Below, piece after piece: positions 8,967 to 64,000 of a stretch of DNA of 64,000 bases (positions are counted from its first letter, which is position 1; each line of letters opens with the position of its first letter). Made by a program: the position numbers and the translations under genes. The stretch covers positions 1 to 64,000 of IMG/VR virus record IMGVR_UViG_3300034117_001582, one strand, 5' to 3'. The notes beneath the pieces are model-generated. The model ran no database searches, was not told where the DNA came from, and saw nothing but the letters and a program-made list of their open reading frames with translations.

Positions 8967-8974
8967 ATTTTTTT

Positions 8975-9440: not shown

Positions 9441-9445
9441 ATATG

Positions 9446-9519
9446 TAGTTAATACTGGACTCGAACCAATGACCTATTCCGTATCAGGGAATCGCTCTAA
9501 CCAACTGAGCTAATTAACT
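9446..9519 (-). tRNA. tRNA-Ile(GAU)
   Basis: cloverleaf, loop CTGATAC. Confidence 0.92.
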
Positions 9520-9594
9520 ATGTCCTCGTCTTTCCGAGATGTCAATAGGGATATTTTGTGTACAATTCAGGACTCTCATATACTTCCTTATTAG

Positions 9595-9667
9595 CACGCC
9601 CGGATGGATTCGAACCACCAACACTTGGTTTTGGAAACCAATGCTCTACCGTTGGAGCTACAGACGT
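9595..9667 (-). tRNA. tRNA-Trp(CCA)
   Basis: cloverleaf, loop TTCCAAA. Confidence 0.92.
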
Positions 9668-9679
9668 GTGTCTTATTTG

Positions 9680-9753
9680 GGTAACTAATGGGAATTGAAC
9701 CCATGGCACAAGGTACCACAAACCTTTGCTCTACCAACTGAGCTATAGTCACC
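9680..9753 (-). tRNA. tRNA-His(GUG)
   Basis: G-1:C73 identity pair, loop TTGTGGT. Confidence 0.92.
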
Positions 9754-9860
9754 ATTTATTTGTAGTTAAGTAGCTGACACACACTCTCGTTTCACCATCT
9801 TATGTCAACAGGTTAATGCACTTTACGAGTTTCCCGTTTCTTACCACCACAATATTTTAA

Positions 9861-9966
9861 TTTCAATGAACTTCTTCTTTCTTCACGGGAGTAGGACACC
9901 AACCTCTCACTTCCTACCCCCGTTGTTTCTCTTACAAAGATATGTAATCACTTTTGATTTGCCAAA
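9861..9966 (-). promoter_or_regulatory. Bacteroidota sigma-A-type promoter with hairpin + boxA-like leader for the tRNA operon
   Basis: TTTG (9966-9963), 20 nt, TATCTTTG (9942-9935); then hairpin ACGGGGGTAGGA...TCCTACTCCCGT and GTTCATTGAAA. Confidence 0.75.
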
Positions 9967-10001
9967 CAATTTGTAAAATATTTTTTATTTTTTTTTAAAA
10001 C

Positions 10002-10031
10002 AAAAAACCCCACTTTTTTGAAGAGGGGTTC
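10002..10031 (-). terminator. intrinsic terminator
   Basis: AACCCC..GGGGTT hairpin with minus-strand U tract. Confidence 0.6.
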
Positions 10032-10070
10032 TAAATGTTTTATTTGTGTTTTTTAATTACCTGATTGTGT

Positions 10071-10478
10071 TCATCTGTAATTATCATCACTTCCATCATC
10101 CATGTCCTCATCGTTCTCAAGACCACGCCATACACTATCATAATCAGGATTATCAGCAAAACCTAATGCTCCACTTTTACTACCTTCTAAATCTCTAATA
10201 TAATTCTTTAAAAGATTAATAACTTGGTCTATCCTTTCTGCTCTTTGTCTTGGACTTACTTTTTTACTCAAACTATGTTGACTTGATAAATATCCAAATT
10301 GTCCTGGTTCAGAAAAAAGATTACCTTCATCCTCTCTAAAGAATATATCATCTAATTTTCTTTCAAAATCTAATTCTTTGTCTTCTTTTTTATTTGATTT
10401 AAATCCATCACCTTCGTTGACAATTCTTCTAACTATACGAGTTAAATCTCTTTCTGTTAATCTCATCACTCTTTTCAT
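10071..10478 (-). CDS. leader-bearing hypothetical protein (MKRVMRLTERDLTRIVRRIVNE)
   Basis: leader nearly identical to that of 53276..53776. Confidence 0.8.
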   Translation of the reverse strand: MKRVMRLTERDLTRIVRRIVNEGDGFKSNKKEDKELDFERKLDDIFFREDEGNLFSEPGQFGYLSSQHSLSKKVSPRQRAERIDQVINLLKNYIRDLEGSKSGALGFADNPDYDSVWRGLENDEDMDDGSDDNYR

Positions 10479-10537
10479 ATTAATAGTTTTATATATAAAT
10501 ATGTCTATTCATGAAAAACGTAATCATTAATGTTTTT

Positions 10538-11035
10538 TTATTTTATTTCAAATGCACATCTCATGATTTTTTTGGTTTTAGTGGCATCTTCAGGGTTTCC
10601 AATTACAACACCATCTTTGATTGTAAACGCATGTCGGTTAACAAGAACAAAGAATGTGCCCTTTGGGTTTTGTTTAACAAATGTCCCCACAGTCATGTTT
10701 CTTTTCTTTGTCTCACCTTTGATTGTTACATCATACATTAATGATCTTAACATTTGGTCATTATGTCTTACCCCAACAGGACAAACCTTTTTACCATTAA
10801 CCTTAAACAAACTGTCACCCATTTTGACAAGTTTGGATACCGTTCCGTATGTACCATTTCTTGGTTTTCTTCCAAATTCATCGGCAACATACCTATGAGC
10901 ATAATCATAAGATACTTCAAATGAGGATGCAAATGCTCTAACAACACAATCATTTCTTTCGCCTTTGGCAGTTGCTGATTCCGCATATCCTTTGATTGCC
11001 GTTCCTGTTGCTTCGTATGGTAGTTTGTTTTTCAT
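10538..11035 (-). CDS. hypothetical protein, possible Cys-His peptidase-like fold
   Basis: NDCVVRA and RHAFTI; start at MKNKL after a TATCTTTG promoter. Confidence 0.6.
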   Translation of the reverse strand: MKNKLPYEATGTAIKGYAESATAKGERNDCVVRAFASSFEVSYDYAHRYVADEFGRKPRNGTYGTVSKLVKMGDSLFKVNGKKVCPVGVRHNDQMLRSLMYDVTIKGETKKRNMTVGTFVKQNPKGTFFVLVNRHAFTIKDGVVIGNPEDATKTKKIMRCAFEIK

Positions 11036-11107
11036 ACTACAAAGATAATAAAAAAAATTGATATAAAAAAAAGGCATTGAAAAAAAATTCAACACCTTTT
11101 TAATAAT

Positions 11108-11178
11108 AAGTTGTGGCGGGACTCAAACCTGCGACACGTCCGAAATCGGATTGCTCTAACCAACTGAGCTACACAACT
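11108..11178 (-). ncRNA. tRNA-like RNA or pseudo-tRNA with collapsed anticodon loop
   Basis: AGTTGTG/CACAACT acceptor, canonical D arm GCTC-AGTTGGTTA-GAGC, anticodon arm TCCG-ATTT-CGGA, T-loop TTTGAGT. Confidence 0.75.
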
Positions 11179-11374
11179 TAATTTTTCGTTTTAAGGTCAC
11201 CCAAAAAACATCATCAATTAACCTAAATTAATTATAGGACTTCTTTTTCAGAAAAGAAAGCGATTTTCTCTTCATATTCAAACATTTCTTTGATAAACTG
11301 AAAATAGTCCTCTGAATTAATAAATTCATAATGTTGTTGTTCAAAAACGTCTTCCATAATTTTAATTTTTTTAG

Positions 11375-11448
11375 TGATTCCGAAAGGATTCGAACCTTTA
11401 ACCCTCGCCTTAGAAGGGCGATGCTCTATCCAGTTGAGCTACGGAACC
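11375..11448 (-). tRNA. tRNA-Arg(UCU)
   Basis: cloverleaf, loop CTTCTAA. Confidence 0.93.
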
Positions 11449-51414: not shown

Positions 51415-52272
51415 TTATTTAGTCAAATATTTTTTAATATCCATTTTGATAATTCCATCAAATACTTCTTTTGGTATTCTATATTCCACAAATTCCATTT
51501 CATCCGTTAAGTGAACGATAACCCCCCCAAAGAATTTAATATCACTGTATTTTGTCCCTTCCAACATCTTTAATAATAGTTTGGCATAGAACGGTAATTG
51601 AGTATTATAGTGACCAAGAGCATTGTTTGGTAACTTTTCAAATGGTTTTTTCATCGGTTTTGTAAAGGTATTTGTTTCCATGTTTTTTGGTTTGTTTGTT
51701 TTCCAGTCTGTTACAACAAAACCAAAACCGGTTTTTTCTTTATTTAACATTAACCAAAATTTATCGGGTTGGCCAGTGTATCCCAATTCAGGATGACCCA
51801 AAACCATCTCAGTATCAAGTAATACCGCACCCCTTTCTTTCATTAACTTTAAGAACTTTTTACCGGCTTTAATCATTCTATCCCCCTTCATAGTCATTTC
51901 AAGGTCACACTCATAAACAGGTTGTCTTACCTCTTTTTCTATATCAAACATAGATAGAGTTTCAGTTTCCAATTCAAAGTGGACTCTACTTCCCATGTTT
52001 GTTGATGTGGTCCCAGCTCTTGCCCATTCATCCATAAGTTGTTGTGCCTCATACGGGTCACCTTTTGCCTTTTTATACGCAATTTCTTCCGTTGGGAACT
52101 CATCGTAAAATAATTTCATTAGTTTAGATACGGATGGAAAATCTGACCTCACGTTTCCGTCCAAATCTTTCATCGTATATTTGTGGGCCTCTTCCTCAAA
52201 TGTTAATTCAAGTTCTTTTTGTTTTTCCGTGATTAATTCACGAAGTTCTTTTGCAATAATTTTTAAATCCAT
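51415..52272 (-). CDS. PD-(D/E)xK exonuclease (RecB/Cas4-like phage exonuclease)
   Basis: GSRVH, E, GQPD, DWKT, QL..Y. Confidence 0.85.
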   Translation of the reverse strand: MDLKIIAKELRELITEKQKELELTFEEEAHKYTMKDLDGNVRSDFPSVSKLMKLFYDEFPTEEIAYKKAKGDPYEAQQLMDEWARAGTTSTNMGSRVHFELETETLSMFDIEKEVRQPVYECDLEMTMKGDRMIKAGKKFLKLMKERGAVLLDTEMVLGHPELGYTGQPDKFWLMLNKEKTGFGFVVTDWKTNKPKNMETNTFTKPMKKPFEKLPNNALGHYNTQLPFYAKLLLKMLEGTKYSDIKFFGGVIVHLTDEMEFVEYRIPKEVFDGIIKMDIKKYLTK

Positions 52273-53189
52273 TATTTAATTTCCTCATAATATTTTTCTA
52301 TGTCTCCTCTGAGATCACAGACATCTTTATCTTTTGGTAGTTTTACCAATTTCACTCTGTTGTAAAGAACACCCCCATTTAATTTTTCAAATAACTTTTT
52401 GGCATCAAAATAAGCGTCACCATCCAAACATACTATGATATTCTTTTTTGCTTTTGTGTATAATTTTTCCCAAAGGTTCTCGTTAATATATTTTCCAAGT
52501 AAACATATTGAGTTATCCAAAAAGAAACTATCGAACACACCTTCAACAAGATATATGTCTTTTTTCCAATCAATTAAACTCTCGTTGAAAATTAAAAAGT
52601 CTTTTGCTGCTTCAGGGTTTTTATATTTTAATCTACTTCTTGGGTTCCAAGACCTTGATACAAAAAAGTTTAGTTCACCCTTTTTATTATATGATGGCAC
52701 AATAATTCTTCCAGCATATTCACCTTCAATACATAATCCTATATTGTACTTATTAATGATTTCATCTGTGATACCTCTATTTTTTAAGTAGTTGTACGCT
52801 TCTTTTCTTGGGATGTGTAGCGGATGGATTTCTTCAAACTTTTTATACTCCTTTGGTAGTTCCATCGGTTTATAAACTTTTTCTTTCTTTTCAAACTCAT
52901 CAGGTCTGATTAGTTTATAAACTTTTTTATCTTTTTTGTTTCCATATTTATCTATTAGTTTTCCTAAATGTCCGTATGTGCCATGCGTTTCAGCACATGC
53001 CCAACATTTATATACATGTTGATGGAAATTGATTTCAAGGTTACCCTTTCCATCAGTTTTATCTAACGCTTTAATATCGTATGAACATACCGGACAGTCA
53101 ACAGACATTTGACCGCTGGATTCATTAACGTTTTTTGGTTCACCAAACATCGTTAACAATAAATCAACCAATAGGGATTCTTCTTTCAT
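52272..53189 (-). CDS. DNA primase (Zn finger + TOPRIM)
   Basis: CPVC..CWAC; YLKNRGI; RIIVP; VEGVFD; LDGDA; KDVCD. Confidence 0.9.
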   Translation of the reverse strand: MKEESLLVDLLLTMFGEPKNVNESSGQMSVDCPVCSYDIKALDKTDGKGNLEINFHQHVYKCWACAETHGTYGHLGKLIDKYGNKKDKKVYKLIRPDEFEKKEKVYKPMELPKEYKKFEEIHPLHIPRKEAYNYLKNRGITDEIINKYNIGLCIEGEYAGRIIVPSYNKKGELNFFVSRSWNPRSRLKYKNPEAAKDFLIFNESLIDWKKDIYLVEGVFDSFFLDNSICLLGKYINENLWEKLYTKAKKNIIVCLDGDAYFDAKKLFEKLNGGVLYNRVKLVKLPKDKDVCDLRGDIEKYYEEIK

Positions 53190-53228
53190 ACCTAAAAGAT
53201 ACGAATTTTAAAGGGAATGTCAATTAAC

Positions 53229-53256
53229 AAAAAACCCACCTTTATGGGGTGGGTTT
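53229..53256 (-). terminator. intrinsic terminator
   Basis: AAACCCACC-loop-GGTGGGTTT. Confidence 0.7.
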
Positions 53257-53275
53257 AAAATATTATATTATTTTA

Positions 53276-53776
53276 TTATCTATTTCCGTCAAAGAAAAAC
53301 ATTTTTTGACGACAAACTAATTGATATTTTTGTTTTTTTCCGTCAGTCATTACCATTATTCTTTGTTCATAATCTACAACACCATTTTGGTCCATATTTT
53401 CTGTTGAAGTACCACCCTTTACTAATTTTTGTTTTGCTGTAATCTCAAAAGTTTCACCAGGTTCTACGGTAAAAGGCCCTCGCTCAACAATTGTCATGTT
53501 GTCATTCATAGGCATAATTTTCGTTATAGTAAGTGGTGCAGTTCCAGCATTTCTAAGACCCCTGAATTTAAATTCAATTGTTTGTCCAAATTCAACTTCA
53601 CCATCTCGGTTACGCACAACCATTGTTCCTACTAAAGGCCCCTTACGCATTTCAGCCTGCTGAGCTCCCTGTGTTGAAGGATTTGGCATACCTATAGGTC
53701 CTTCACCTTCTTCATTAATAACTCGTCTAACGATACGTGCTAAATCTGACTCAGTTAATCTTACTATTCTTTTCAT
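53276..53776 (-). CDS. leader-bearing DUF1573-like Ig-fold protein
   Basis: MKRIVRLTESDLARIVRRVINE; GEV..NAGTAPLTI..VEPGETFEI. Confidence 0.75.
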   Translation of the reverse strand: MKRIVRLTESDLARIVRRVINEEGEGPIGMPNPSTQGAQQAEMRKGPLVGTMVVRNRDGEVEFGQTIEFKFRGLRNAGTAPLTITKIMPMNDNMTIVERGPFTVEPGETFEITAKQKLVKGGTSTENMDQNGVVDYEQRIMVMTDGKKQKYQLVCRQKMFFFDGNR

Positions 53777-53851
53777 ATTAAAATGTATTTTTTTCTTTAT
53801 TTATTATATAAATACCAACCTACCTTAAAAAAATCAAAAAAAAAAAAAGAA

Positions 53852-54457
53852 TTACCAAATTTTTTGTTCTTTCATATAACCAAGAACACAAGTATATGAA
53901 TCAGCCATATCAAAACATTCTTTTTTCAAAGTATTATTTCTTGTATATAACCAATTAATTTGTGGTTCTTTATCTGAAACTTTTTTCCACACAATTTCTT
54001 TTTTATCAATAGTTTTAGGTAACCCACCAAATAACACATATTTATCCTTATCGTTTTTTTGAACCAATTCTGGCCAAGCATATTTTCTTGAGTTGTATGT
54101 TGATATAAAGTTTGGTACTATTCCCAAAATATCATAAATTGATTTTGTAATCATTGAGTTGTATCTTAATAATACTCCAACTGTCCAAATATTGTTTGAG
54201 TTCAAAAGTGGTTCTTCAATAACAACATTTGTAATACCCAAATTAACGTATCCTCTTAGTTTTTCCTCAAATGATACCACCTTTAATAATAACTCTTCAA
54301 TTTTATCTTCAGGTTTTGGTTTAATTACCGGTGAAAAGTGTGTTAATTCCAATAATTGTTGTGATTGAATATCAAATAGACTCCACCCAATTGTTTTGGT
54401 GGATATATCTAATCCAAGAACTTTTGGTGAGTTCTTTAAATCTGTTTTTTCTGACAT
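53852..54457 (-). CDS. RuvC-like Holliday junction resolvase
   Basis: LGLDISTKTIG, VIEEP, DMADS. Confidence 0.82.
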   Translation of the reverse strand: MSEKTDLKNSPKVLGLDISTKTIGWSLFDIQSQQLLELTHFSPVIKPKPEDKIEELLLKVVSFEEKLRGYVNLGITNVVIEEPLLNSNNIWTVGVLLRYNSMITKSIYDILGIVPNFISTYNSRKYAWPELVQKNDKDKYVLFGGLPKTIDKKEIVWKKVSDKEPQINWLYTRNNTLKKECFDMADSYTCVLGYMKEQKIW

Positions 54458-54465
54458 AAGGTAAC

Positions 54466-56673
54466 TTAAAAATCTAGTTTAATCGGATACTGTTGAATCC
54501 CTTGTCTTTTTTCGGGGGATTGTATCTTAGATATAACCATAAGTTCTTTATCTGCGTTGTAAAGTCCAACTTCGGTAACGTAAGGATTACCACCATTCCA
54601 AGTTGGATTTGAAGAATCAAAGAATTGTGTTTGACCCAAGTTACATAAAAAGTTCATAACATATATGGTTGCTTGAATGTCTGTTCGAATATTACCAAAG
54701 AAGAAGTATTCCCCACCAAAGTTAAATGTCAGGCCAGTTTGTCCTACCGCAGGTAAATTAATATAGTTATCTAACCTATATGGGGATGCCGAGTTATACA
54801 TACTATTAGTCAACTGAATTGTTGTTCCTGTCATACCAGATTGTGTAAGATATCCGCCAACAGTTGTTGCCGATAATTGTGGCATAACATTAATTTCTTT
54901 CCATGCCGTTGCAGTTGGTCTTGTTGTTCCGCTTGAGACTTTTTGAGCAATTAACTTAAATTCATTTGCGGTAAATCCACTTGGTGTTGTAAAAGTTGAT
55001 TGTAAAAAAGGAAACTCATTACCAAATCTAATTAAGATGTCTGATGCTCCAGGTAATAAACTTTGGTCATTACCCGTAATAGTTGAGTAGTAATTACAAT
55101 GTAACGAATTAGTGAAAGCGGAGTTACTAAAAATGTAAGTTAAAAATAGCGTTTCACTACTACCCGTTAATAACCCAACAGTACTACCTAACGTACCTGC
55201 AAATGTATTTGGTGTCACAAGACCTAATTTAGGTGCCGGTAATGTCCAATTTCTATTTGATTTGTAGTTTAATGATGCAACTATTTCATCATCATCAAAG
55301 ATAATCATTTTATAATCAGGAAACACTTTACCAATTCGATTAGGTTGTCCACTAGTGTTAGCATGTGTATCCCATAAATGATAGTATCTTAAACCAGGAG
55401 CATTAAAATCAATATCTTTTTTGGATTCGATATAATGTGGTTCAAATAAATTTAACGACGTAAACCCTGATGGATCAACAAAGAACTCTTCACCTATAGT
55501 TGCATTTGGGTTTTTATGCCACATTAACCAAGGAATAGAAAGTTTAAAGTTTCTTGCTTGTCCGGTATTTCCAGGGTTATTCGTGTCGAAGTCTTCCATT
55601 GCAAATTTCTCACCGTAGAAATTATCTATAGATTGATTAGTATAATGAACAATCGCAATAGCCTTTTGGTCTACAGGTGGTACCGTAATTTTTTCTTCAA
55701 AAGAGTTATAATAATAAACAGAATCTGTATCATATTGACCTGAATTTGTTTTATACCCAAAATATTCTTTAGACCCTGTATAACCTGTCGATTTAAATAA
55801 ATTATAGTCTTGATTAGTTAAACTAAAAAGACCAGCCGGTGATTCAGTCCAAGGAATATTCATATTCCAAGCAAAAACATCTCTTTGTGCTACATCACAA
55901 TTTGTTTCAAAATTAATAACATCGTTAGCCCAAAATGGTGCCGGTGTAAAGGTATCATATAAATCAGTCATACCACTTGGGTAAAATAAAACTGAAGATG
56001 ACCCTGTAAACCCAAGTGTACCAAAATTAGGTAATTGTCTATCCACTTGAATTGTTACAGTACTTGCCGTTGAGGTATTACCCGTAATACCAATAACAGC
56101 ATATGTAAACATGGGTCCTGCTCCCGATATTGGTGATATTGAACCATTAGTAAATAATGTTAAAAACATGCCAGAAGTGACGGTGCCTGATACAGATGGA
56201 TTTACTGATGTTGCAGATATAGTTAAAACAGTACCTGAAGTTATACCACTATTTTGAGCAATAAAGTTAGGGTTGATTGTATACGCCGAAGACGTGAATG
56301 CACTATACGTTACAGGTGAACCGGTAGAGCCACTAAAGAATCCTCTTGGCGCTGCACTATTATAAACACTATCAATATATGAATTATCAAAAGGAACTCC
56401 GTAAGTACTTCCAGATGTTGAATCTAAAAATAATGGGTATTTAACTTCCATTCTATTTTTTTGTGGTACTGGTGCCAAATTTTGTGTGTTGTATTGTGGC
56501 ATTAGTACATTATATTGTACAGGATCAATACCATTTATACAATCATAACAAACTTCACTATCACCCACTTGGAAGTAAGCTATATCAAATTTACCTTGTG
56601 ATATTTTCTTTCTTGCCGCATCGGTCATTAATGTGTTTATTAATGCTGCCGTATTTTTAATTATGTAAGACAT
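54466..56673 (-). CDS. virion structural protein (tail/baseplate-associated)
   Basis: LMTDAARKK..YFQVGDSE N-terminus; YVTEVGLYN...ISKIQSP C-terminus. Confidence 0.7.
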   Translation of the reverse strand: MSYIIKNTAALINTLMTDAARKKISQGKFDIAYFQVGDSEVCYDCINGIDPVQYNVLMPQYNTQNLAPVPQKNRMEVKYPLFLDSTSGSTYGVPFDNSYIDSVYNSAAPRGFFSGSTGSPVTYSAFTSSAYTINPNFIAQNSGITSGTVLTISATSVNPSVSGTVTSGMFLTLFTNGSISPISGAGPMFTYAVIGITGNTSTASTVTIQVDRQLPNFGTLGFTGSSSVLFYPSGMTDLYDTFTPAPFWANDVINFETNCDVAQRDVFAWNMNIPWTESPAGLFSLTNQDYNLFKSTGYTGSKEYFGYKTNSGQYDTDSVYYYNSFEEKITVPPVDQKAIAIVHYTNQSIDNFYGEKFAMEDFDTNNPGNTGQARNFKLSIPWLMWHKNPNATIGEEFFVDPSGFTSLNLFEPHYIESKKDIDFNAPGLRYYHLWDTHANTSGQPNRIGKVFPDYKMIIFDDDEIVASLNYKSNRNWTLPAPKLGLVTPNTFAGTLGSTVGLLTGSSETLFLTYIFSNSAFTNSLHCNYYSTITGNDQSLLPGASDILIRFGNEFPFLQSTFTTPSGFTANEFKLIAQKVSSGTTRPTATAWKEINVMPQLSATTVGGYLTQSGMTGTTIQLTNSMYNSASPYRLDNYINLPAVGQTGLTFNFGGEYFFFGNIRTDIQATIYVMNFLCNLGQTQFFDSSNPTWNGGNPYVTEVGLYNADKELMVISKIQSPEKRQGIQQYPIKLDF

Positions 56674-56705: not shown

Positions 56706-58295
56706 TTACCCATTTAAACATATTACACCAATTTTTTGAGTTGTAACCTGTTGTGGACTAACATTTGGGTTTATACTTCTACAAGTATTAGGTGTAATCG
56801 ATATATTTTGTATACTAACAACATCTTTTAAATAACCTCTCAATTCACAATTGTTTTGTTGTGAACATGGTGTGTTTATATAATGTACAATTGTTCCTGA
56901 AGCAAAACCTACAGTAGATAATTGTACAGAATACGTTTTAGTGTATGCGCTTGTTATGACATCACCACCATCACAAGATGGTCTTATTACTGAAGTTGTT
57001 GTGGTTGGGCTTGTCGATATCAATGATACGGTGGCACCTACATTCGTAGCGGTTGTTATCGTGTTAGTTATTGTTGGACTTATGTTTGACGTATATCCCG
57101 TAGATAAAACATTAAATAATAAACTCATATTAACTACCGTACCCGCAGGTAATGGTGTTGGAGATACCGTAACAGACCAAGTTGTTGTTCTTGACGACGA
57201 ATTGCTACTATTAATTATTTGACCCGGAGTTAAAACTAAATTAACCGTATAATTTTGAAATATTTGTTGTGCGGTTAATGTAAAAGATTGATTGCTCACA
57301 GTATTAACCGAATCTTTGACGTATGCGGTATATGCTCCTGAACCTAAATTAAGAAATACATTTGATGGTTGATAATTTACGCCATCAAGAGAATAAGTAT
57401 ATGGCGCAATGCCTCCTGTTGCGGTTATCGAAACAGAACCATTTGTAAATGTTGAACAAGAAGGGTTTGTTGGTTGTAGTGCGATTGTTATTGGTGGTGT
57501 TTGACAAACTCCACTTGAAACTATTAATGATGACCCATACGCCATTGCCCCCACTAAAGTCCAACTACCTGTTGGTGGTATTTGTGGTGTGATGTTATAT
57601 GGTGCTCCTCCTGATGTCCAACCACTTATTGTCCATCTTGTGGTACCACTATTATAATACATAACGTAACTTGGAGTTACACTTGTCCAAGATGGGTAAT
57701 TATTTATTGTGTTACCAGATGCAAAATTAATTTGTGTAACATTGGTACCTTGTGTTAATTCAAAACACAAATCATTAGGATATGTCGGTGTTGGTGTTGG
57801 TATTGGTAAACATTGTGTACACCCCGTGTAATTTGCTGAAGACACCGCATAACTACCAATATAAGTTTGACCCGTATATAAAGTAGTGCCACTACTAGTC
57901 CAACAACCAACTTGTGTTGTTAAGTCATATACCGTACCAGCAGAAAAAGGATTAACTAAATCAGCTAAGTAATAGACATAAGTCCCACTATATGAACAAT
58001 TTGAAAATTGTTCTAAATAAAAACTATCATATTCAACTACACATGTTGTTGTAGCACTAAAATCACCATAATAATCAACAATTGTTGCGGTATAACTTCC
58101 AGGTCTTAAATTTGTGAGTAAGTTACCTTGTCCACCATTATCCCATGTAATATTATATGGTGGAGTTCCACCTGTAACGTATAAACTAACAACACCATTT
58201 GATGATTGTGGTGTTGACGAATTTATGCTTGTACAATCTACACCTAACGGTAAGAGTGTTATTATATTACAACTATTTCCACTTAAAAGTCCCAT
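56706..58295 (-). CDS. SprB-repeat structural/adhesin protein
   Basis: GGTPPYNITW and GGIAPYTYSLDG..YQ.SNVF repeats; Cys/Thr-rich. Confidence 0.75.
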   Translation of the reverse strand: MGLLSGNSCNIITLLPLGVDCTSINSSTPQSSNGVVSLYVTGGTPPYNITWDNGGQGNLLTNLRPGSYTATIVDYYGDFSATTTCVVEYDSFYLEQFSNCSYSGTYVYYLADLVNPFSAGTVYDLTTQVGCWTSSGTTLYTGQTYIGSYAVSSANYTGCTQCLPIPTPTPTYPNDLCFELTQGTNVTQINFASGNTINNYPSWTSVTPSYVMYYNSGTTRWTISGWTSGGAPYNITPQIPPTGSWTLVGAMAYGSSLIVSSGVCQTPPITIALQPTNPSCSTFTNGSVSITATGGIAPYTYSLDGVNYQPSNVFLNLGSGAYTAYVKDSVNTVSNQSFTLTAQQIFQNYTVNLVLTPGQIINSSNSSSRTTTWSVTVSPTPLPAGTVVNMSLLFNVLSTGYTSNISPTITNTITTATNVGATVSLISTSPTTTTSVIRPSCDGGDVITSAYTKTYSVQLSTVGFASGTIVHYINTPCSQQNNCELRGYLKDVVSIQNISITPNTCRSINPNVSPQQVTTQKIGVICLNG

Positions 58296-58296
58296 A

Positions 58297-59967
58297 TTAC
58301 CAAGTTACTCCACTTAATCTTTTCCATCCAATATTATCTCTATAATAAAAATAGTCATTATCCCAAGTTACAGACCCAACCTCACCAACAGTATTATCAG
58401 TTGTCCCTGACGGTGTGTATGTGGTTGTTGGGTATATTACTAAGTTTGGTACATATGCCGTATTTAAACCGGTTCCTGTAATCCCCGTACCACCCAATAT
58501 AACAGAGTAATTAGATAATATTATAGACTCTTCACTTGAAACAATAGCTGAGTTAAATCCACTAACCGTATTTCCAGACCCACCAATAATCGTTGAATTA
58601 ATTAAATGATCAGAAGGGAAAATTGGAGTTATTATATTACTTTCTCCTCCAAATATACCACCATTATCTGTAGTTCCACTATCCACAATATTTAATTGAC
58701 CACCAATCGTAACGGTTCTATCACCTCTAGATTCTGTTTGATATCCTTGTGAGAATGACTGAGCACCTATGGCTGTCGTACCATACCCTATTGCAAAGGC
58801 ATTAACACCTTTTGTTATTGTACCTTCACCACCAACAAAAGAACCTACCCCGTACGCAATAGTATTAAGTCCTGTTGAAAATGAGTGTAATCCATATGAT
58901 GCGGTTCCTTTACCAGATGCGAATGAGTTATTACCAATAGCTGAAGTACTAACACCAAGGGATAACGTGTAGTTACCTATTGCGTTGGTGAGTGACCCTT
59001 TAGAGTTAGCTCCATATCCACCCATAACCATATTCCCTCCCCATAAACTTGGAGAGCTTGTATTACCAACTAATACAAATCCAGTACCTGCCGTAGTAAG
59101 CGAAGTATCTGTTAAATAAACAATAGTTTGGAGAGTACCAATACTATATGTTGCTGCAGACACCACATAAACATTTTGAATAAATCCATTATAATTAGTA
59201 TCATCAATTAGCATATACTGTCCAGCAGTAAAGGCTGAAAAGACATTTCCATACTCACTACTTAAATAAACAACACCTGATGTTAACCCTGTAGCTAAAT
59301 ATGCCAAATTTGTTCCCGTTTTAGTTGCTATCCCTTCAGAGTGAGAATAACTTCCAAAACTTGTTGTTCCTGAACCTTCACTATGAGAAGTTGTTCCGGA
59401 CGCTATAGTGTATAACCCTTCTGCGTGAGTGTATCGTTCTAAGGCTTGGACATTACCACCAAACGCAAAACTTAAAATTGATTGAGCGTCAGACCCTGTT
59501 GATTGGACCCTGTTGTGTACAGTTATTTCGTCTGTACAAGCATGTATGTTATTTGTATAAAAACTTGTGATACAATTTCCTGAACCTCCTGTAAACGGTG
59601 TTGTTGTCCCCGTTACAGTAAACGTACCCCCCGTTGTGTTAGTAAAAGTCATTGTGCCACCCGTAGAATTAGATGTTCCCCCTGTTACAAATATTTCCGT
59701 AGGGATTGTTGTCCCCGTAGTAAAACCACTCACATTAAATGTACCTCCAGTTGTGTTTCTAAATGTTGCAGTTCCTGTAATGTTACTATAGGTACCTCCC
59801 GTTACAAATACATCAGGAGAACCACCAAAAAGTGGAACTAATTGTGATAATCTTGCCTTGTATGATGACCCTTGAGCACTTTGTGATGTGTCACCAGTTA
59901 TTACAATATGTATGAAGTCGTTTAATGTTGCCCCAGTGGCTAAAGTCCTCGATGTTAATTTACTCAT
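58297..59967 (-). CDS. tail-fibre-like protein with YadA-head-like beta-roll repeats
   Basis: VTGGT repeats; SHSEG..T..G 14-aa repeats. Confidence 0.75.
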   Translation of the reverse strand: MSKLTSRTLATGATLNDFIHIVITGDTSQSAQGSSYKARLSQLVPLFGGSPDVFVTGGTYSNITGTATFRNTTGGTFNVSGFTTGTTIPTEIFVTGGTSNSTGGTMTFTNTTGGTFTVTGTTTPFTGGSGNCITSFYTNNIHACTDEITVHNRVQSTGSDAQSILSFAFGGNVQALERYTHAEGLYTIASGTTSHSEGSGTTSFGSYSHSEGIATKTGTNLAYLATGLTSGVVYLSSEYGNVFSAFTAGQYMLIDDTNYNGFIQNVYVVSAATYSIGTLQTIVYLTDTSLTTAGTGFVLVGNTSSPSLWGGNMVMGGYGANSKGSLTNAIGNYTLSLGVSTSAIGNNSFASGKGTASYGLHSFSTGLNTIAYGVGSFVGGEGTITKGVNAFAIGYGTTAIGAQSFSQGYQTESRGDRTVTIGGQLNIVDSGTTDNGGIFGGESNIITPIFPSDHLINSTIIGGSGNTVSGFNSAIVSSEESIILSNYSVILGGTGITGTGLNTAYVPNLVIYPTTTYTPSGTTDNTVGEVGSVTWDNDYFYYRDNIGWKRLSGVTW

Positions 59968-59992
59968 TTCTTTATTTTATATATATCAAAGT

Positions 59993-60280
59993 TTATTGAA
60001 AATCGTATTGATCTCCGTCCATAAATTCAAAACATTCCCCGTCTTGGAATTGTTTATAGTCACAATCCTTAAAACAATACTCACATCCATTACTATCTAT
60101 AATTTTTACAACATAGGTTAGATAGGTTTCAAACACCGCAGGTAATATAAAACTATATGGTATTGTACTTGTTGTTGCTATGTATTGGCAAGTTCCAGCA
60201 GTCCCACATTCGTCACAAACCCAAATATCATATGGACTTGTTCCCCCTGTTATTGTATTTAAAGTTATTTGTACTGACAT
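59993..60280 (-). CDS. small Cys-rich structural protein
   Basis: GTSPYDIWVC..VKIIDSNGC. Confidence 0.7.
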   Translation of the reverse strand: MSVQITLNTITGGTSPYDIWVCDECGTAGTCQYIATTSTIPYSFILPAVFETYLTYVVKIIDSNGCEYCFKDCDYKQFQDGECFEFMDGDQYDFQ

Positions 60281-60281
60281 C

Positions 60282-61907
60282 TTAATTACAATTACCGTTT
60301 AATCTACAAGAACTCGTAATGAATCCTTTATCATTTACACTATATATGAAATTACCTTGTTGTACGTAATCAACAGTCAATATAGTCGTTAATCCACTAT
60401 CTTGGAATAAACAATCACCTTCTGATAATGATGTAACTAAATTGGTCGTGTAGAATTCTATTGGTTTACCAAAGTCTGTTAATTGGCAAATAGGACAGTT
60501 AATCGAATACCCTCCTTTACCTGACCATGGCGTGTATGTTAATGGTGTTGTTATCACAGTTAAACAATCTAAACAATTTGTGTATGTCGTGGCAGTTGTT
60601 GCCGTAAACGTATCTTGTGTTGAGGTTATGAATCCACCAGGAGCTACATAATTAACATAATTACCTACATATTCATAACAATTAGCGGTATATCCTGTAG
60701 TTGTGCCTGTAATAGGTTTTAATATATCACCAGCAACAATATTTGTTGGAGGATATGCCGCTTGTACTATCATAGTATTAGAAGTACAAGAAGTAAACAC
60801 GAATACTGTTCCAACGGCATATGTTGGTGCCGGTGTTGGAGTAGGCGTAGGTGTCGGAGTTGGTGTCGGAGTTGGCGTCGGAGTTGGTGTTGGTGTAACA
60901 CAAAGTACCGAACAACTTCCAGTATATGCTGATACAATATACGTAACAATCGCGTTTGGACTACCTCCATTAACATCTTGTGTATATGTAGCACAAGCAA
61001 GTTCATTATTTATCAATCCGTAAATTGTTGTACCTGTTGTTGTTACGGTTGTTGCCGTAGAACCCGTTAATAACAATGCTCCACTAACATAATATTTAGC
61101 TCCCGTATTACAATCAACCAATTCTTTAACCGTAGCACACACAAAGTTTCCACTATCAACCACAAACGTAACCGTATCTGCCGATGGTGTTACCGTAGGA
61201 GTAGGTGTAGGTGTAGGGGTTGGTGTTGGTGTAGGCGTTGGTGTAATATCTGTTAAGGTTATATTCACTGTAAACCCACTACAAATATTTGCAGTCGGAG
61301 TTGGTGTTGGAGTCGGAGTTGGTGTTGGAGTAGGGGTTGGTGTAGGAGTTGGTGTAGGGATATCGCATTCCAATAACACATCAAAATCTAATGATGAACA
61401 AGGGTCTGCCGGTGGTGTCGGCGTGATACACGAACCACTATACATTATAGTTTCATCTAAATCGGGACATATTGACGATGTTGGGTTAGACCCAAAGAAA
61501 TAACAAGTTCCACCTAATGTGTCACTTAAACACCAATTAATATTATTAAAATAAATATAACCAAAAGATGATGACCCACCAGTCCAATATGGGTAACTAT
61601 TATACCCACCCTCTATCGTATAATCACCACTATATCCACTATATATACTATTTTGAATATTTAAACATAAAACATCTGAACAACAATCTAAACATCGCGG
61701 GTTGGTACAGTCTGTAACGACCGTAGAACCACTACCTTCAAAAGTTATTGATGTTCCGGTAACTCCAGAAACAATCGTATAACATCCATTAGGCATATCT
61801 GTCTGACCAGTAATGCTGTGAACAGTACCAACAGTGCTAGTACCAAAAAAACTTGTAGCACTATACACAAGGTTATAACAACAACTACTAAAAATTACAT
61901 TTGCCAT
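60282..61907 (-). CDS. Cys-rich structural protein with three (Pro-Thr)n mucin-like linkers
   Basis: PTPT tracts at about 60823-60900, 61183-61245 and 61291-61360. Confidence 0.8.
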
Positions 61908-61952
61908 TTAGAATTTAACTTTATTATATAAATAATCAAAAGTTTATTTTAT

Positions 61953-62750
61953 TTAGAAAACCAACTCAATTTCATTAGGTTGATAGTTATAAAAGTGCTT
62001 ATATGCGTGAATAAATGCAACATTTGGTTGTTCTTCCATAGGTATCGACCATCCTGTCTTGTCCCACCAATTACCAATGTCTTTTGAGTCATATTGTGCC
62101 CAATCTTCCCAAAACCCACTTGTATACCCAAAAAATTGAAATAAAAATGAAAGTGTCGCATCGCACCACTCAATTGGTCTTGAATCTAACTTATAAATTT
62201 CCTCCCAAGGCACCTCATCCAATCTATTATAAATTTCTATAAATTTTTCTCTATTAAATATTGTTCCACCACATGCACCATAACTTTGTAAAGAACCCGA
62301 AAGACTCCAACTATGTCTTGAGTCGTCAATAACTCCAAACTTATTTTTTAAATATTCATAAAGTTCTGTGGTATATAACGGACCATTCGCACCTGAGATA
62401 TCAAACTTTGGTGGCCTTGTAATTTCAAATCTACACCACACATCATCTTCATAATGAATAATCCAATCAACATCTTTAAGTGTTGTTGTACAGGCATCAT
62501 AAATTCTTTTTAACCAATCAAGTTGTCCGTTCTCTTTAACAAACACTCTTCCTGAATGTGGATTGTTAATCCCTTGTTGTTCTATCCAAGTATATTCACA
62601 ATTAAATTTTTTTGCAACGGGTTCCAATAATGTTGACCCATCCTCATATAACGCAACGGGAATATTGGGATACACCTTTCTTAATTGTTCTAAGGCCTTA
62701 TAACACGCAACTAATTTGTGTCCTGATTGATAAAATGCTCCTATTTTCAT
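61953..62750 (-). CDS. GT-A fold glycosyltransferase
   Basis: YEDG, WIIHYEDDV DxD-like motif, CGGTIF, IH.YK; start MKIGAF. Confidence 0.7.
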   Translation of the reverse strand: MKIGAFYQSGHKLVACYKALEQLRKVYPNIPVALYEDGSTLLEPVAKKFNCEYTWIEQQGINNPHSGRVFVKENGQLDWLKRIYDACTTTLKDVDWIIHYEDDVWCRFEITRPPKFDISGANGPLYTTELYEYLKNKFGVIDDSRHSWSLSGSLQSYGACGGTIFNREKFIEIYNRLDEVPWEEIYKLDSRPIEWCDATLSFLFQFFGYTSGFWEDWAQYDSKDIGNWWDKTGWSIPMEEQPNVAFIHAYKHFYNYQPNEIELVF

Positions 62751-63943
62751 AATATTGTATCTATTCTTTGTCCCCATTCACCATTTTTATGATTAACCCA
62801 ATAAACCCATTTATGTGGTTTTTCATATGATTCTATGGTTATGTGTAATTTATCTTGATGTAACATCAAGTCTTGTCTATGAAGTACAACCCCGTCTTTA
62901 TCTTCTATTCCAATATAAATAAAATTAAAATCTTCAGGTTTTGGTATTTCTAAATTATATTCAAACTTTTCTTTTTGTTTTAAATGCCAATCAGATAAAT
63001 CATTAATAGGCGGGTCGATTCCTCTTATCGTGTCCTCGTGTAACCGTCTGTCTTTAAAGTTAATGCCGGCATATATTTCATAATCTCTATGTGTTCTAAC
63101 ATTACCTAAACCATATATCTCAAGGTCAATATTATTATCCTCTTCTTGCAACATATGTCTTAACCTTCTTTTGGATTCGTTATCCATTTCCCACCATTGT
63201 TTTTCAACAACACCTTTGTTTTTGTTTTCATCATTAAAGTCTGTCCAATGTTTTGTCCTACCTTCTCTTGTATATTCATGCCAAACAACAGTCTTATGTG
63301 GGTGGAATAAATCATATCCTAATGTAAATGAACGAATGGATAAACTAATTTCATCACCAGCAAAATAGATATTCGGATCGTACTTATATTCTTCACAATG
63401 CTTTCCTATTGTAAAAAAGAAGTGTCCACTAACAAATCTTGCAGGTATTGGTTTATCTAAGGTTTCCCAACCTGAAATAGAGTGAGGCCTAAAAAGTATT
63501 GTTCCTCCTGGTGTAAAATTTGACGCAACCATCTTATATGGTTCAGTGTTTAACAACTCATTTGTACTTGGTCTGTACATACCAGCATATGACGTGATGA
63601 TTGGTTTTTCAGAACCGGTTTGTTTCATCATTTCAATTAATTCAACATCCCAATCTTGTAAAAATCTGTGGTGTGAGTCTAATTGTAATGTGTATTCTTC
63701 ATTATCCCATAATTTTTGAATCTCACTACGAGCCCAACAAAGACCTTTACTTAATGACCAATGATAATCTAAAATTTTAAATCTTGGGTCATTTACAAAT
63801 TCTTCCATTGATTCAGTTTCGTCATGTTGCCAACAAATTCCAAATGTTAAATTTTCGGGGTGTTTTGCATTATTAATGCAATCTCTAATAGTCGGTAAAA
63901 GTTCGGGGTCTCGATAAGACGCTATTTGAACAAATATTTTCAT
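62747..63943 (-). CDS. GT60-like polypeptide/hydroxyproline alpha-GlcNAc transferase
   Basis: IFVQIASYRDPEL, GLCWAR, QLDSHHRF..WD, YDPNIYFAGDE, WHEY, YGLGNVRT. Confidence 0.85.
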   Translation of the reverse strand: MKIFVQIASYRDPELLPTIRDCINNAKHPENLTFGICWQHDETESMEEFVNDPRFKILDYHWSLSKGLCWARSEIQKLWDNEEYTLQLDSHHRFLQDWDVELIEMMKQTGSEKPIITSYAGMYRPSTNELLNTEPYKMVASNFTPGGTILFRPHSISGWETLDKPIPARFVSGHFFFTIGKHCEEYKYDPNIYFAGDEISLSIRSFTLGYDLFHPHKTVVWHEYTREGRTKHWTDFNDENKNKGVVEKQWWEMDNESKRRLRHMLQEEDNNIDLEIYGLGNVRTHRDYEIYAGINFKDRRLHEDTIRGIDPPINDLSDWHLKQKEKFEYNLEIPKPEDFNFIYIGIEDKDGVVLHRQDLMLHQDKLHITIESYEKPHKWVYWVNHKNGEWGQRIDTIL

Positions 63944-64000
63944 AAAGGGTTTTCTTTATGATAAGTTTTAACGATAAAAAAACAATAGTAAATCTAACAA

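What the first reader, a model, noticed from the sequence alone, without database searches (positions are those of the whole stretch)
56706..63943. Candidate virion O-glycosylation system: GT60-like initiating transferase, second GT and mucin-like (Pro-Thr)n structural proteins
Seen: two overlapping glycosyltransferase genes directly upstream of a Cys-rich protein with three long PT tracts, then Thr/Ser-rich fibre and SprB proteins. Known: GT60 enzymes add alpha-GlcNAc to Skp1 hydroxyproline (Dictyostelium) or to mucin Thr (trypanosomatids). Inference: the phage builds its own mucin-type glycans on tail or fibre linkers, with the second GT extending them, for stiffening, protease shielding or host-surface interaction.
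Basis: partly seen in the sequence, partly recalled or inferred. Interest (0 to 1): 0.75.

Follow-up and report, generated by a model that had tools for sequence, protein, structure and literature searches.

The report
Phage glycosyltransferase cassette beside mucin-like fibre protein
An uncultured 292-kb lake-water phage carries a GT60-type sugar transferase and a second, unclassified transferase between the only two proline-threonine-repeat proteins of its genome, and related phages hold different sugar enzymes at the same spot, so the phage probably coats its fibre proteins with its own variable sugars, though no glycan has been measured.

Summary
Gene 62747-63943(-) is a clear GT60/PF11397 enzyme with an invariant D-x-H motif. 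Gene 61953-62750(-) has no Pfam family but models as a GT-A glycosyltransferase with an invariant E-D-D motif. The two genes are joined by an ATGA overlap. Downstream lie a 541-aa protein with 29 Cys and three (PT)n tracts, a Thr/Ser-rich fibre-like protein and a SprB-repeat protein, all inside a baseplate/fibre block.

- Of 319 ORFs in the genome, only the two genes flanking the transferase pair carry (PT)n tracts.
- In unrelated genomic contexts the pair again sits beside non-homologous P/T-rich proteins (10/51 near ORFs against 2/197 far ORFs).
- In 80 related loci, the slot directly upstream of the PT protein holds interchangeable glycan enzymes: GT60 alone, GT60 plus this GT, divergent GT60 plus HtrL, GT29-like, GT10-like, sulfotransferase, methyltransferase, or UDP-galactopyranose mutase.

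No prolyl hydroxylase was found, so Thr is the likelier acceptor. No hydroxymethyl-base pathway was found, so DNA is an unlikely target. The second GT associates with UDP-Galp mutase in relatives. Everything rests on sequence and context; no glycan has been demonstrated.

Verdict: a new variant of phage virion glycosylation. Interest 0.7.

The parts
62747..63943 (-). GT60-family glycosyltransferase (398 aa), the putative initiating polypeptide alpha-GlcNAc transferase. The Pfam domain covers residues 1-296, followed by a conserved C-terminal extension of about 100 aa.
   Evidence: PF11397 E=1.5e-66; phrog_24687; 9-sequence alignment down to 34% identity; no hydrophobic segment
63671..63679 (-). 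Codons for the D89-S90-H91 (D-x-H) metal-binding motif of GT60, within the invariant QLDSHHRF block
   Evidence: Invariant in alignment A2
61953..62750 (-). Second glycosyltransferase (265 aa), GT-A fold, in no Pfam family. It is a candidate extending enzyme, possibly a galactofuranosyltransferase.
   Evidence: 101 homologues, none with a Pfam domain; AF2 pLDDT 90.4; Foldseek matches to GT6/GT8/GT95-like folds; beside UDP-Galp mutase in relatives
62442..62450 (-). Codons for E101-D102-D103, the DxD-like motif of the second GT
   Evidence: E101 and D103 invariant and D102 at least 90% conserved in 35 sequences; H248 also invariant
62747..62750 (-). ATGA overlap of the GT60 stop codon and the second GT's start codon (translational coupling inferred)
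   Evidence: Sequence read directly; the same 4-nt overlap is seen in relatives
60282..61907 (-). PT protein (541 aa, 29 Cys): four small beta domains joined by (PT)n tracts. It is the putative O-glycosylation acceptor.
   Evidence: Orthologues keep P/T- or Thr-rich tracts down to 31% identity
61293..61358 (-). (PT)11 tract 1 (residues 184-205)
   Evidence: mixed synonymous codons
61197..61244 (-). (TP)8 tract 2 (residues 222-237)
60831..60896 (-). (TP)11 tract 3 (residues 338-359)
63994..64000 (-). 3' end of the 170-aa gene (63994-64506 in the genome, mostly beyond the window). It encodes an N-domain, a (TP)14 tract and a Cys-rich C-domain. It is the second (PT)n protein of the genome and lies directly upstream of GT60.
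59993..60280 (-). 95-aa Cys-rich protein, paralogous to the N-domain of the 170-aa protein and to the 95-aa gene at 64503-64790
   Evidence: tblastn paralogue hits
58297..59967 (-). Thr/Ser-rich (28%) fibre-like protein, 556 aa
   Evidence: YadA_head match below the cut-off; phrog_25468; composition
56706..58295 (-). SprB-repeat protein, 529 aa, 15 Cys
   Evidence: PF13573 E=1.8e-11; phrog_26672 'virion structural protein' E=3e-10
54466..56673 (-). Conserved 735-aa protein that ends the fibre block; used as the anchor to collect 80 related loci
53232..53256 (-). The only intrinsic-terminator-like site on the minus strand between 53 and 64 kb, so the GT and fibre genes lie in one uninterrupted co-directional block

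Best explanation
The two genes form a cytoplasmic protein O-glycosylation cassette of an uncultured freshwater jumbo phage.

Proposed mechanism:
1. The GT60 enzyme transfers a first sugar onto threonines of the proline-threonine tracts in the neighbouring fibre-module proteins. By family precedent the sugar is alpha-GlcNAc from UDP-GlcNAc. The targets are the 541-aa PT protein and the 170-aa protein upstream.
2. The translationally coupled GT-A enzyme adds a second sugar. In related phages this is probably galactofuranose. In this phage the donor would have to come from the host.
3. Further transferases encoded elsewhere in the genome may extend the chain.

Across the phage group the enzyme set next to the PT protein is swapped, so the glycan differs between lineages.

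Shown: gene identities, motifs, fold, solubility, gene order, and the statistical and comparative association with P/T-rich proteins.
Inferred: the acceptor, the sugars, the order of action, and that the acceptors are virion parts.
For: 1. GT60 membership and intact D-x-H and WHEYTR motifs. The family's characterised members glycosylate Thr in mucin-like repeats or Hyp of Skp1 (PMC8724618; PMC6939170).
2. The second gene has a GT-A fold with an invariant E-D-D motif and an invariant His and a conserved ATGA coupling to GT60.
3. Neither enzyme has a membrane segment.
4. Only 2 of 319 ORFs in the genome have (PT)n of 4 or more repeats, and they are the two flanks of the pair.
5. In 13 distinct contexts of the pair, 6 have a P/T-rich protein within two ORFs. 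The counts are 10/51 near ORFs against 2/197 far ORFs, Fisher p=3e-6. One such neighbour was compared with the PT protein and shows no similarity; the others gave no BLAST match to it.
6. In the 75 of 80 loci anchored on the 735-aa protein that have a PT-protein orthologue, it sits at a fixed place. The slot just upstream holds varying glycan enzymes: GT60 alone, GT60 plus this GT, divergent GT60 plus HtrL_YibB, DUF3431, GT29-like, GT10-like, FkbM methyltransferase, sulfotransferase, or GLF.
7. Phages with 80-81% identical anchor proteins carry GT60s that are 82% or 40% identical to this one, so the cassette is exchanged.
8. All five related large records tested encode one GT60. In the four whose slot lacks it, GT60 lies beside large proteins, Thr-rich in three and Cys-rich in three; one is P/T-rich by the threshold used.
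9. The PT tracts are conserved in position among orthologues of 50-75% identity and are encoded by mixed synonymous codons, so they are selected at the protein level.
10. There is no minus-strand terminator within the block, and baseplate J and gp25 genes lie upstream.
Against: - No glycan has been observed. There is no cultured relative of the PT protein or of the 735-aa protein, so no proteomics exists.
- About half of the independent contexts of the GT pair have no P/T-rich neighbour within 10 kb. The GT60 of the cultured Xanthomonas jumbo phages sits near DNA polymerase and a carbamoyltransferase, with no P/T-rich neighbour.
- Some relatives have P/T-rich orthologues with no enzyme gene in the slot (L131-135).
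- Fibre regions are known hot spots for accessory genes, which could explain part of the co-localisation.
- The complex prediction of GT60 with the PT segment gave no answer.
- The PT-protein model has low confidence and no fold match.
- UDP-Galp mutase is absent here, so the second enzyme's donor is unknown.
Confidence: 0.55

Rival explanations
1. The transferases act on a non-protein or host target, such as host lipopolysaccharide, capsule, a cell-wall glycan or a small molecule. This could block superinfection or remodel the receptor. On this reading they lie in the fibre region only because that region tolerates accessory genes, and the PT tracts are plain flexible linkers.
For: About half of the contexts of the GT pair lack a P/T-rich neighbour. 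HtrL_YibB, found in the same slot in relatives, is known from an LPS core gene cluster (family description). The genome has a separate large glycan locus with GDP-mannose dehydratase, methyltransferases and GT2/GT10 enzymes, which resembles polysaccharide synthesis. XacN1-type phages place GT60 beside a carbamoyltransferase.
Against: Both enzymes lack membrane segments, unlike most envelope-glycan transferases that work at the membrane. The characterised GT60 members are polypeptide transferases. The enrichment of P/T-rich neighbours in independent contexts (p=3e-6) and the fixed position of the enzyme slot directly upstream of the PT protein are not explained by a hot spot alone, because every Pfam match obtained for slot genes (12 of the 20 scanned) was to a glycan-related family.
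Confidence: 0.2
2. The enzymes glycosylate phage proteins, but not the PT tracts. Candidate targets are the Thr/Ser-rich fibre, the SprB-repeat proteins, the capsid, or the 2919-aa collagen-like G-T-(S/N) protein encoded at 181-190 kb.
For: Several neighbouring proteins have 28% Thr+Ser. The genome encodes a giant collagen-like protein rich in Thr and Ser. In relatives whose slot lacks GT60, GT60 lies beside Thr-rich large proteins that are not P/T-repeat proteins (L154, L156, L157). In L136-type orthologues the tracts are poly-Thr rather than PT.
Against: The most specific recurring neighbour is P/T-rich. The collagen-like gene lies 120 kb away.
Confidence: 0.17
3. The enzymes glycosylate hydroxymethylated bases of the phage DNA to evade restriction, as in T-even phages and the 5mYOX- or thymidylate-synthase-linked GT systems.
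For: Phage GT-A and GT-B enzymes that hypermodify DNA are widespread (bioRxiv 10.1101/2023.12.21.572611). The genome has a thymidylate-synthase-family gene. In XacN1, GT60 lies near replication genes.
Against: The thymidylate-synthase homologue passes the ThyA equivalog model and has the canonical PCH and PFNIASY motifs. No Tet/JBP dioxygenase (its control search rang in no genome), no C5-cytosine methyltransferase and no other 2OG oxygenase family was found. GT60 sits in the fibre block, not with nucleotide-metabolism genes. No GT60 member is known to act on DNA.
Confidence: 0.05

Closest known systems
CAZy GT60 polypeptide alpha-GlcNAc transferases (Dictyostelium/Toxoplasma Gnt1 acting on Skp1 hydroxyproline; Trypanosoma cruzi and Dictyostelium pp-alphaGlcNAcT acting on mucin Thr)
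   Same: Same Pfam family (PF11397, E=1.5e-66), D-x-H motif, soluble enzyme. The neighbouring candidate acceptors are Thr/Pro-rich, like protist mucin repeats.
   Different: The gene is in a tailed phage. No prolyl hydroxylase partner is present, whereas some green-algal GT60 proteins are fused to a 2OG oxygenase. There is an extra conserved C-terminal region of about 100 aa. The partner enzymes differ from the Skp1 pathway. Activity, sugar and acceptor are untested.
Mycobacteriophage virion glycosylation (Freeman et al. 2023, as described in PMC12619734)
   Same: Phage-encoded transferases next to structural genes that modify the phage's own virion proteins in the host cytoplasm.
   Different: In mycobacteriophages the glycans sit on C-terminal tails of the capsid and tail-tube subunits, and the hosts are Actinobacteria. 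Here the candidate acceptors are internal (PT)n tracts of fibre-module proteins, the initiating enzyme is GT60, and the enzyme set varies between relatives. I could not read the original paper.
Animal mucin-type O-glycosylation by GT27 polypeptide GalNAc transferases
   Same: GT-A enzymes with a D-x-H motif that start dense O-glycan arrays on Ser/Thr/Pro-rich tandem repeats. GT60 is described as the related family (PMC8724618).
   Different: Golgi-lumen membrane proteins with a ricin-type lectin domain, using GalNAc. Here the enzymes are soluble and cytoplasmic, presumably use GlcNAc, and have no lectin domain detected.
O-glycosylated Pro-Thr linkers of bacterial cellulases and cellulosome scaffoldins (from my own knowledge; not checked with the tools)
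   Same: (PT)n linkers between small beta domains carry short O-glycans that protect and stiffen the linker. In clostridial cellulosomes these glycans include galactofuranose. This resembles the beads-on-a-string PT protein and the link between the second GT and UDP-Galp mutase.
   Different: Those are secreted host proteins glycosylated by host systems. The enzymes are not GT60.
Virus-encoded glycosylation machinery of chloroviruses and mimiviruses (from my own knowledge)
   Same: Large viruses that encode many transferases, sugar-nucleotide enzymes and methyltransferases to glycosylate capsid or fibril proteins independently of the host. This phage also has at least 8 GT-like genes plus GDP-mannose dehydratase.
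   Different: Those are eukaryotic giant viruses. The enzyme families and acceptors differ.
Phage DNA glycosyltransferases (T4 alpha/beta-GT; 5mYOX- or ThyS-associated GT-A/GT-B enzymes)
   Same: Phage-encoded soluble transferases, some with a GT-A fold.
   Different: Those need a hydroxymethyl-pyrimidine pathway, which is not found here. The family and gene context also differ.

Membership tests
CAZy GT60 / Pfam PF11397 (polypeptide alpha-GlcNAc transferase) | Sequence match to the family profile above the curated threshold over most of its length | tested here: met
   225.7 bits against a 21-bit cut-off; profile positions 2-44 and 98-350 of 352 matched
CAZy GT60 / Pfam PF11397 (polypeptide alpha-GlcNAc transferase) | D-x-H/D-x-D metal-binding motif of the GT-A catalytic core, plus a downstream His | tested here: met
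   D89-S-H91 and H222 (in WHEYTR) are invariant in 9 sequences down to 34% identity. The assignment of these residues to metal binding rests on analogy with GT27/GT60, not on a structure.
CAZy GT60 / Pfam PF11397 (polypeptide alpha-GlcNAc transferase) | Transfer of alpha-GlcNAc from UDP-GlcNAc to Thr or Hyp of a polypeptide | not testable with these tools
   Needs an enzyme assay. The complex prediction with the PT segment gave no answer.
Skp1-type hydroxyproline glycosylation pathway | A prolyl 4-hydroxylase (2OG-Fe(II) oxygenase) that creates the Hyp acceptor | tested here: not met
   PF13640, PF03171, PF13759 and PF13661 are all absent from the 99%-complete genome. A host enzyme cannot be excluded.
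GT-A fold glycosyltransferases (second gene) | Rossmann-like GT-A fold with a DxD-type motif after the fourth strand | tested here: met
   Model pLDDT 90.4. 353 PDB matches at E<=0.001, the best being GT6 enzymes at probability 1.0 and TM about 0.5. Swiss-Prot model matches include GT8, GT6, GT95 and GT31 enzymes. E101 and D103 are invariant and D102 is at least 90% conserved.
Any named GT sequence family for the second gene (Pfam, NCBIfam, PHROG; HtrL_YibB) | Significant profile match | tested here: not met
   No hit at E<=0.1 in Pfam, none in NCBIfam or PHROGs. hhalign against the HtrL protein that occupies the same slot gave probability 0.6%. No PDB sequence hit.
Galactofuranosyltransferase (functional class, second gene) | Genomic or biochemical link to the UDP-galactofuranose supply (UDP-Galp mutase) | tested here: inconclusive
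   The gene is adjacent or near GLF (PF03275) in 6 of 13 contexts, including loci without GT60. The window's own genome has no GLF.
Phage virion protein glycosylation system | Transferase genes embedded among structural genes, with a plausible acceptor encoded alongside | tested here: met
   The baseplate J and gp25 genes, the SprB proteins, the GT pair, the PT protein, the fibre and the second SprB protein lie in one co-directional block without a terminator. P/T-rich neighbours are enriched.
Phage virion protein glycosylation system | Glycan detected on virion proteins | not testable with these tools
   Uncultured lineage; no relatives among 50,697 GenBank phage records for the PT protein or the 735-aa protein.
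Phage DNA sugar hypermodification | A source of 5-hydroxymethyl pyrimidine (dCMP/dUMP hydroxymethylase, or methyltransferase plus TET-like dioxygenase) | tested here: not met
   The only thymidylate-synthase homologue meets the ThyA equivalog model and has the Asn of PFNIASY. No PF12851 and no PF00145. The PF12851 control search rang in no control genome, so that absence is weak.

The most novel reading that the evidence does not exclude
A large group of freshwater jumbo phages, probably infecting Bacteroidota, keeps a conserved mucin-like fibre protein and exchanges the cassette of sugar-modifying enzymes next to it. The cassettes seen are GT60 with or without an unclassified GT-A, HtrL, sialyltransferase-like, fucosyltransferase-like, sulfotransferase, methyltransferase and Galf supply. 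The phages would thus diversify the glycan coat of their fibres much as bacteria diversify O-antigens. This 'glycotype switching' of virions could matter for adsorption, protease resistance or escape from host or grazer recognition. The 265-aa enzyme would found a new glycosyltransferase family.
Probability: 0.35. Interest if true: 0.85.

Novelty: new variant of a known kind. Interest (0 to 1): 0.7.

Why it matters
Protein glycosylation of phage particles by phage-encoded enzymes has so far been shown only for mycobacteriophages. GT60 has been treated as a protist family in the reviews I read (PMC8724618, PMC6939170).

If the reading is right:
- GT60 enzymes are common in tailed phages: more than 7,000 metagenomic homologues, and most of the nearest PF11397 Atlas clusters are mostly viral.
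- They start mucin-like O-glycans on phage fibre proteins inside bacterial cytoplasm.
- A whole group of abundant lake phages varies this glycan by swapping enzyme cassettes.

That would add a glycan layer to phage-host recognition and phage stability in nature. It would give a simple soluble enzyme-acceptor pair (GT60 plus a (PT)n peptide) for bacterial glyco-engineering. It would also define a new GT-A family that may use UDP-galactofuranose.

Tried and rejected
1. Complex prediction of GT60 with residues 176-245 of the PT protein gave 'no answer' (score 0.00). It is not evidence either way.
2. The structure of the PT protein has mean pLDDT 58.5 and only domain-level confidence. Foldseek against PDB gave nothing at E<=0.001, and BFVD gave only uncharacterised phage proteins.
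3. PDB sequence searches for both enzymes gave no hits.
4. Hydroxyproline route: four 2OG-oxygenase families are absent. Rejected as phage-encoded.
5. UDP-Galp mutase is absent from the window's own genome, by profile and by tblastn.
6. DNA-modification rival: ThyA is canonical, and there is no TET/JBP and no C5 methyltransferase.
7. Homology between the second GT and the HtrL protein that replaces it in relatives: none detected.
8. Homology between the PT protein and the P/T-rich 541-aa protein of locus L051: none. The similarity is compositional only.
9. Cultured relatives: megablast of the region and tblastn of the PT protein and the 735-aa protein found none. The second GT has one 23%-identical hit in a Synechococcus phage. 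GT60 hits four Xanthomonas/Stenotrophomonas jumbo phages in a different context.
10. Metatranscriptomes: four lake RNA runs give only short contigs (150-340 nt, 90-99% alike) on GT60, the PT protein, the 95-aa gene and the fibre gene. Deep pile-ups on the PT-coding repeats are cross-mapping. DNA carry-over cannot be excluded, so this is no proof of expression or co-transcription.
11. The sigma-70 promoter scan gave no more sites than shuffles and is probably not applicable to a Bacteroidota host.
12. Literature searches for GT60 or PF11397 in phages found nothing relevant. The Freeman et al. paper is not held.

Full report
SETTING. The window is the first 64 kb of a 291,867-bp viral record that CheckV rates 99% complete. 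It is AT-rich (about 31% GC). All genes from 40 to 97 kb lie on the minus strand. The stretch occurs in at least 20 lake-water metagenomes. Neither the region's DNA nor its PT protein or 735-aa protein has a relative among 50,697 GenBank phage records. SprB repeats in the fibre proteins, a genome of nearly 300 kb and a freshwater origin resemble the 'moraphages', freshwater jumbo phages of 200-307 kb with predicted Bacteroidota hosts and four core glycosyltransferase groups (PMC12619734). I could not test whether this phage belongs to them.

THE OBSERVATION. It is confirmed.
- Gene 62747-63943(-) matches PF11397 'GlcNAc', the Pfam family of CAZy GT60, at E=1.5e-66, and phrog_24687 at E=1.5e-103.
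- An alignment with eight homologues down to 34% identity keeps the QLDSHHRF block (a D-x-H motif) and the WHEYTR block invariant.
- The next gene's longest ORF starts at 62777. More than 100 homologues begin at MKIGAF, so the gene is 61953-62750 (265 aa). Its ATG overlaps the GT60 stop codon as ATGA, and the same 4-nt overlap recurs in relatives.
- This second gene has no Pfam, NCBIfam, PHROG or PDB sequence match. Its AlphaFold model (pLDDT 90.4, pTM 0.90) is a GT-A fold. The best matches are GT6 blood-group transferases, GT8 galactinol synthases and plant hydroxyproline arabinosyltransferases, at E about 1e-7 and TM about 0.5. E101 and D103 of the E-D-D motif and H248 are invariant in 35 sequences, and D102 is at least 90% conserved. 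It is therefore a glycosyltransferase by fold and motif, but a member of no named family.
- Neither enzyme has a hydrophobic segment.
- Downstream lie the 541-aa protein with 29 Cys and three (PT)n tracts, a 95-aa Cys-rich protein, a 556-aa protein with 28% Thr+Ser, a SprB-repeat protein and a conserved 735-aa protein.
- Upstream, beyond the window, lie a 170-aa protein, a 95-aa paralogue, a 769-aa SprB protein, several large proteins, and then baseplate J-like and gp25-like genes.
- The only terminator-like site on this strand between 53 and 64 kb is at 53256-53232.

WHAT TIES THE ENZYMES TO THE PT PROTEINS. There are four lines of evidence.

First, in the whole genome (319 ORFs of at least 70 aa) only two proteins contain (PT)n of 4 or more repeats. 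These are the 541-aa protein directly downstream of the pair and the 170-aa protein directly upstream, which carries a (TP)14 tract.

Second, 44 viral contigs carrying the 265-aa family were collected, and nearly all also carry GT60.
- In a close clade the whole fibre block is syntenic. The three PT tracts are conserved in position in orthologues of 50-75% identity and are among the most conserved columns.
- They are written in mixed synonymous codons, so they are not a DNA microsatellite.
- In more distant contigs the fibre genes are not recognisably homologous, yet P/T-rich proteins still abut the enzyme cluster: L043, L046, L049 (both sides), L051/52/54, and the 1361-aa protein of L011.
- The one tested pair shows no sequence similarity outside composition.
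- Counting one representative per context, 10 of 51 ORFs within two genes of the cluster are P/T-rich against 2 of 197 farther away (Fisher p=3e-6).

Third, 80 loci were anchored on the 735-aa protein, at 45-83% identity. In the 75 of them that have a PT-protein orthologue, it sits at a fixed place, and it nearly always keeps P/T-rich or poly-Thr tracts. The slot just upstream varies:
- GT60 plus the 265-aa GT: 19 loci.
- GT60 abutting the PT gene with an 18-66 nt gap: 13 loci.
- A divergent GT60 (about 40% identity) plus an HtrL_YibB-family protein or larger sets that include DUF3431: 15 loci.
- Other contents: a GT29 sialyltransferase-like gene on the other strand; GT10 fucosyltransferase-like plus HtrL; an FkbM methyltransferase; a sulfotransferase; an HtrL-DUF3431 fusion plus a galactosyltransferase-like gene plus UDP-Galp mutase; or nothing.
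- Phages whose anchor protein is 80-81% identical to the window's carry GT60s that are 82% or 40% identical, so the cassette is exchanged between close relatives.

Fourth, all five large related records tested encode exactly one GT60. In the four whose slot lacks it, GT60 lies beside large proteins, Thr-rich in three and Cys-rich in three. One is a 1314-aa protein with 19% Thr, 8% Pro and 20 Cys.

THE SECOND ENZYME. In relatives the 265-aa family sits next to UDP-galactopyranose mutase (PF03275) in six of thirteen contexts, including loci with no GT60 nearby. This points to galactofuranose as its sugar. The window's genome has no mutase. Here the donor would have to come from the host, or the enzyme uses another sugar. 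The enzyme is dispensable in 13 related loci and is replaced by a non-homologous HtrL protein in others.

ACCEPTOR CHEMISTRY. Characterised GT60 enzymes add alpha-GlcNAc either to Thr of mucin-like repeats or to hydroxyproline of Skp1 (PMC8724618, PMC6939170). No 2OG-Fe(II) oxygenase family was found in this genome. Thr is the constant feature of the tracts across orthologues, including poly-Thr variants. Thr is therefore the likelier acceptor. This is inference.

BEYOND THE WINDOW. The genome has a second glycan locus at about 126.7-143.4 kb. It contains GT2-type, GT7C-like and GT10 fucosyltransferase genes, a possible GT1, two methyltransferases, a short DegT-like piece and GDP-mannose 4,6-dehydratase. 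One more GT2 gene lies at 241.8 kb. These could extend the glycan or serve another target.

RIVALS.
- DNA glycosylation is unlikely. The thymidylate-synthase homologue is a canonical ThyA. No TET/JBP or C5-methyltransferase gene was found. The known DNA-GT systems depend on such partners.
- A host-envelope or other non-protein target cannot be excluded. Half of the contexts lack a P/T-rich neighbour. The GT60 of the cultured Xanthomonas and Stenotrophomonas jumbo phages (35-38% identity) sits beside a carbamoyltransferase near replication genes, without P/T-rich neighbours.
- A third rival is that the enzymes glycosylate other phage proteins, such as the Thr/Ser-rich fibre or the 2919-aa collagen-like G-T-(S/N) protein.

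WHAT DID NOT HELP. The complex prediction gave no answer. The PT-protein model is poor: beta domains at about 1-159, 258-332, 367-450 and 458-540, joined by disordered tracts, with no fold matches. Metatranscriptome contigs give only short pieces on several genes of the block, plus cross-mapping on the PT-coding repeats.

VERDICT. The sequence features are real. GT60 membership is met at the sequence level. The functional link between the enzyme cassette and the P/T-rich fibre-module proteins is well supported by comparative genomics, but it is unproven biochemically. I rate the O-glycosylation reading at about 0.55. It is a new variant of a known kind (phage-encoded virion glycosylation).

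Noticed in passing
genome 181308-190067 (-), outside the window: A 2919-aa protein consisting almost entirely of G-T-(S/N) triplets (about 2,600 residues of collagen-like Gly-X-Y repeat, 27% Gly, 39% Thr+Ser) with globular ends. It is a giant collagen-like fibre and another possible glycosylation target.
   Followed up: partly
genome about 126,700-143,400 (+) and 241830-242552 (-), outside the window: A second glycan locus: a GT1-like gene (weak match), GT2_5, a methyltransferase, GT2_4, a GT7C-like gene, a GT10 alpha-1,3-fucosyltransferase, an FkbM methyltransferase, a short DegT-like ORF (204 aa, possibly truncated), GDP-mannose 4,6-dehydratase and a GT2. It is interleaved with an exonuclease, a dUTPase and PhoH. 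One more GT2 gene lies at 241.8 kb.
   Followed up: partly
window 7675-11448 (-): A cluster of 8 tRNA genes: Met x2, Asp, Glu, Ile, Trp, His and Arg-TCT.
   Followed up: no
genome 290440-291591 (-), outside the window: A thymidylate synthase homologue of 383 aa, longer than usual because of insertions. It has the canonical PCH and PFNIASY motifs and passes the ThyA equivalog model.
   Followed up: partly
window 59993-60280; genome 64503-64790 and 63994-64506: Three paralogous small Cys-rich domains with a G-G-T-S/P-P-Y-D/Q motif reminiscent of SprB repeats. In relatives the 170-aa member varies from 94 aa (no PT tract) to 378 aa.
   Followed up: partly
loci L005 and L006 (Xanthomonas phages XacN1 and Xoo-sp13): The GT60 homologue of these cultured jumbo phages is followed by a 765-aa carbamoyltransferase and three unnamed ORFs. 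It lies between DNA polymerase/RNase H and a protein of about 3,300 aa, with a GT9-like gene nearby. These phages are a tractable system for testing what phage GT60 enzymes do.
   Followed up: partly
ESM Atlas clusters: PF11397 clusters are mostly viral (tailed phages). Some phage versions are fused to GT7 or O-fucosyltransferase domains. A green-algal cluster fuses PF11397 to a 2OG-Fe(II) oxygenase, that is, hydroxylase plus GT60 in one chain.
   Followed up: no
window 60722-60915 and 61110-61497: Lake metatranscriptome contigs pile up (word depth up to about 540) exactly on the PT-coding repeats, with many loose ends and false joints. PT-coding sequence appears to be common in transcripts of that community and cross-maps.
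   Followed up: partly
window 51415-54457 (-): Directly after the fibre block come genes that look like replication or recombination functions by eye: a 201-aa protein, a 166-aa protein, a 305-aa protein with Cys-rich zinc-finger-like motifs and a 285-aa protein. I did not annotate them.
   Followed up: no
locus L155 (G002:C1:71000-88000): In a 295-kb relative, GT60 follows a 1314-aa Thr/Pro/Cys-rich protein and is followed by eight co-directional genes of 217-482 aa, probably a long glycan-enzyme operon like that of L011 (two GT25, a GT11, GLF and an epimerase).
   Followed up: no
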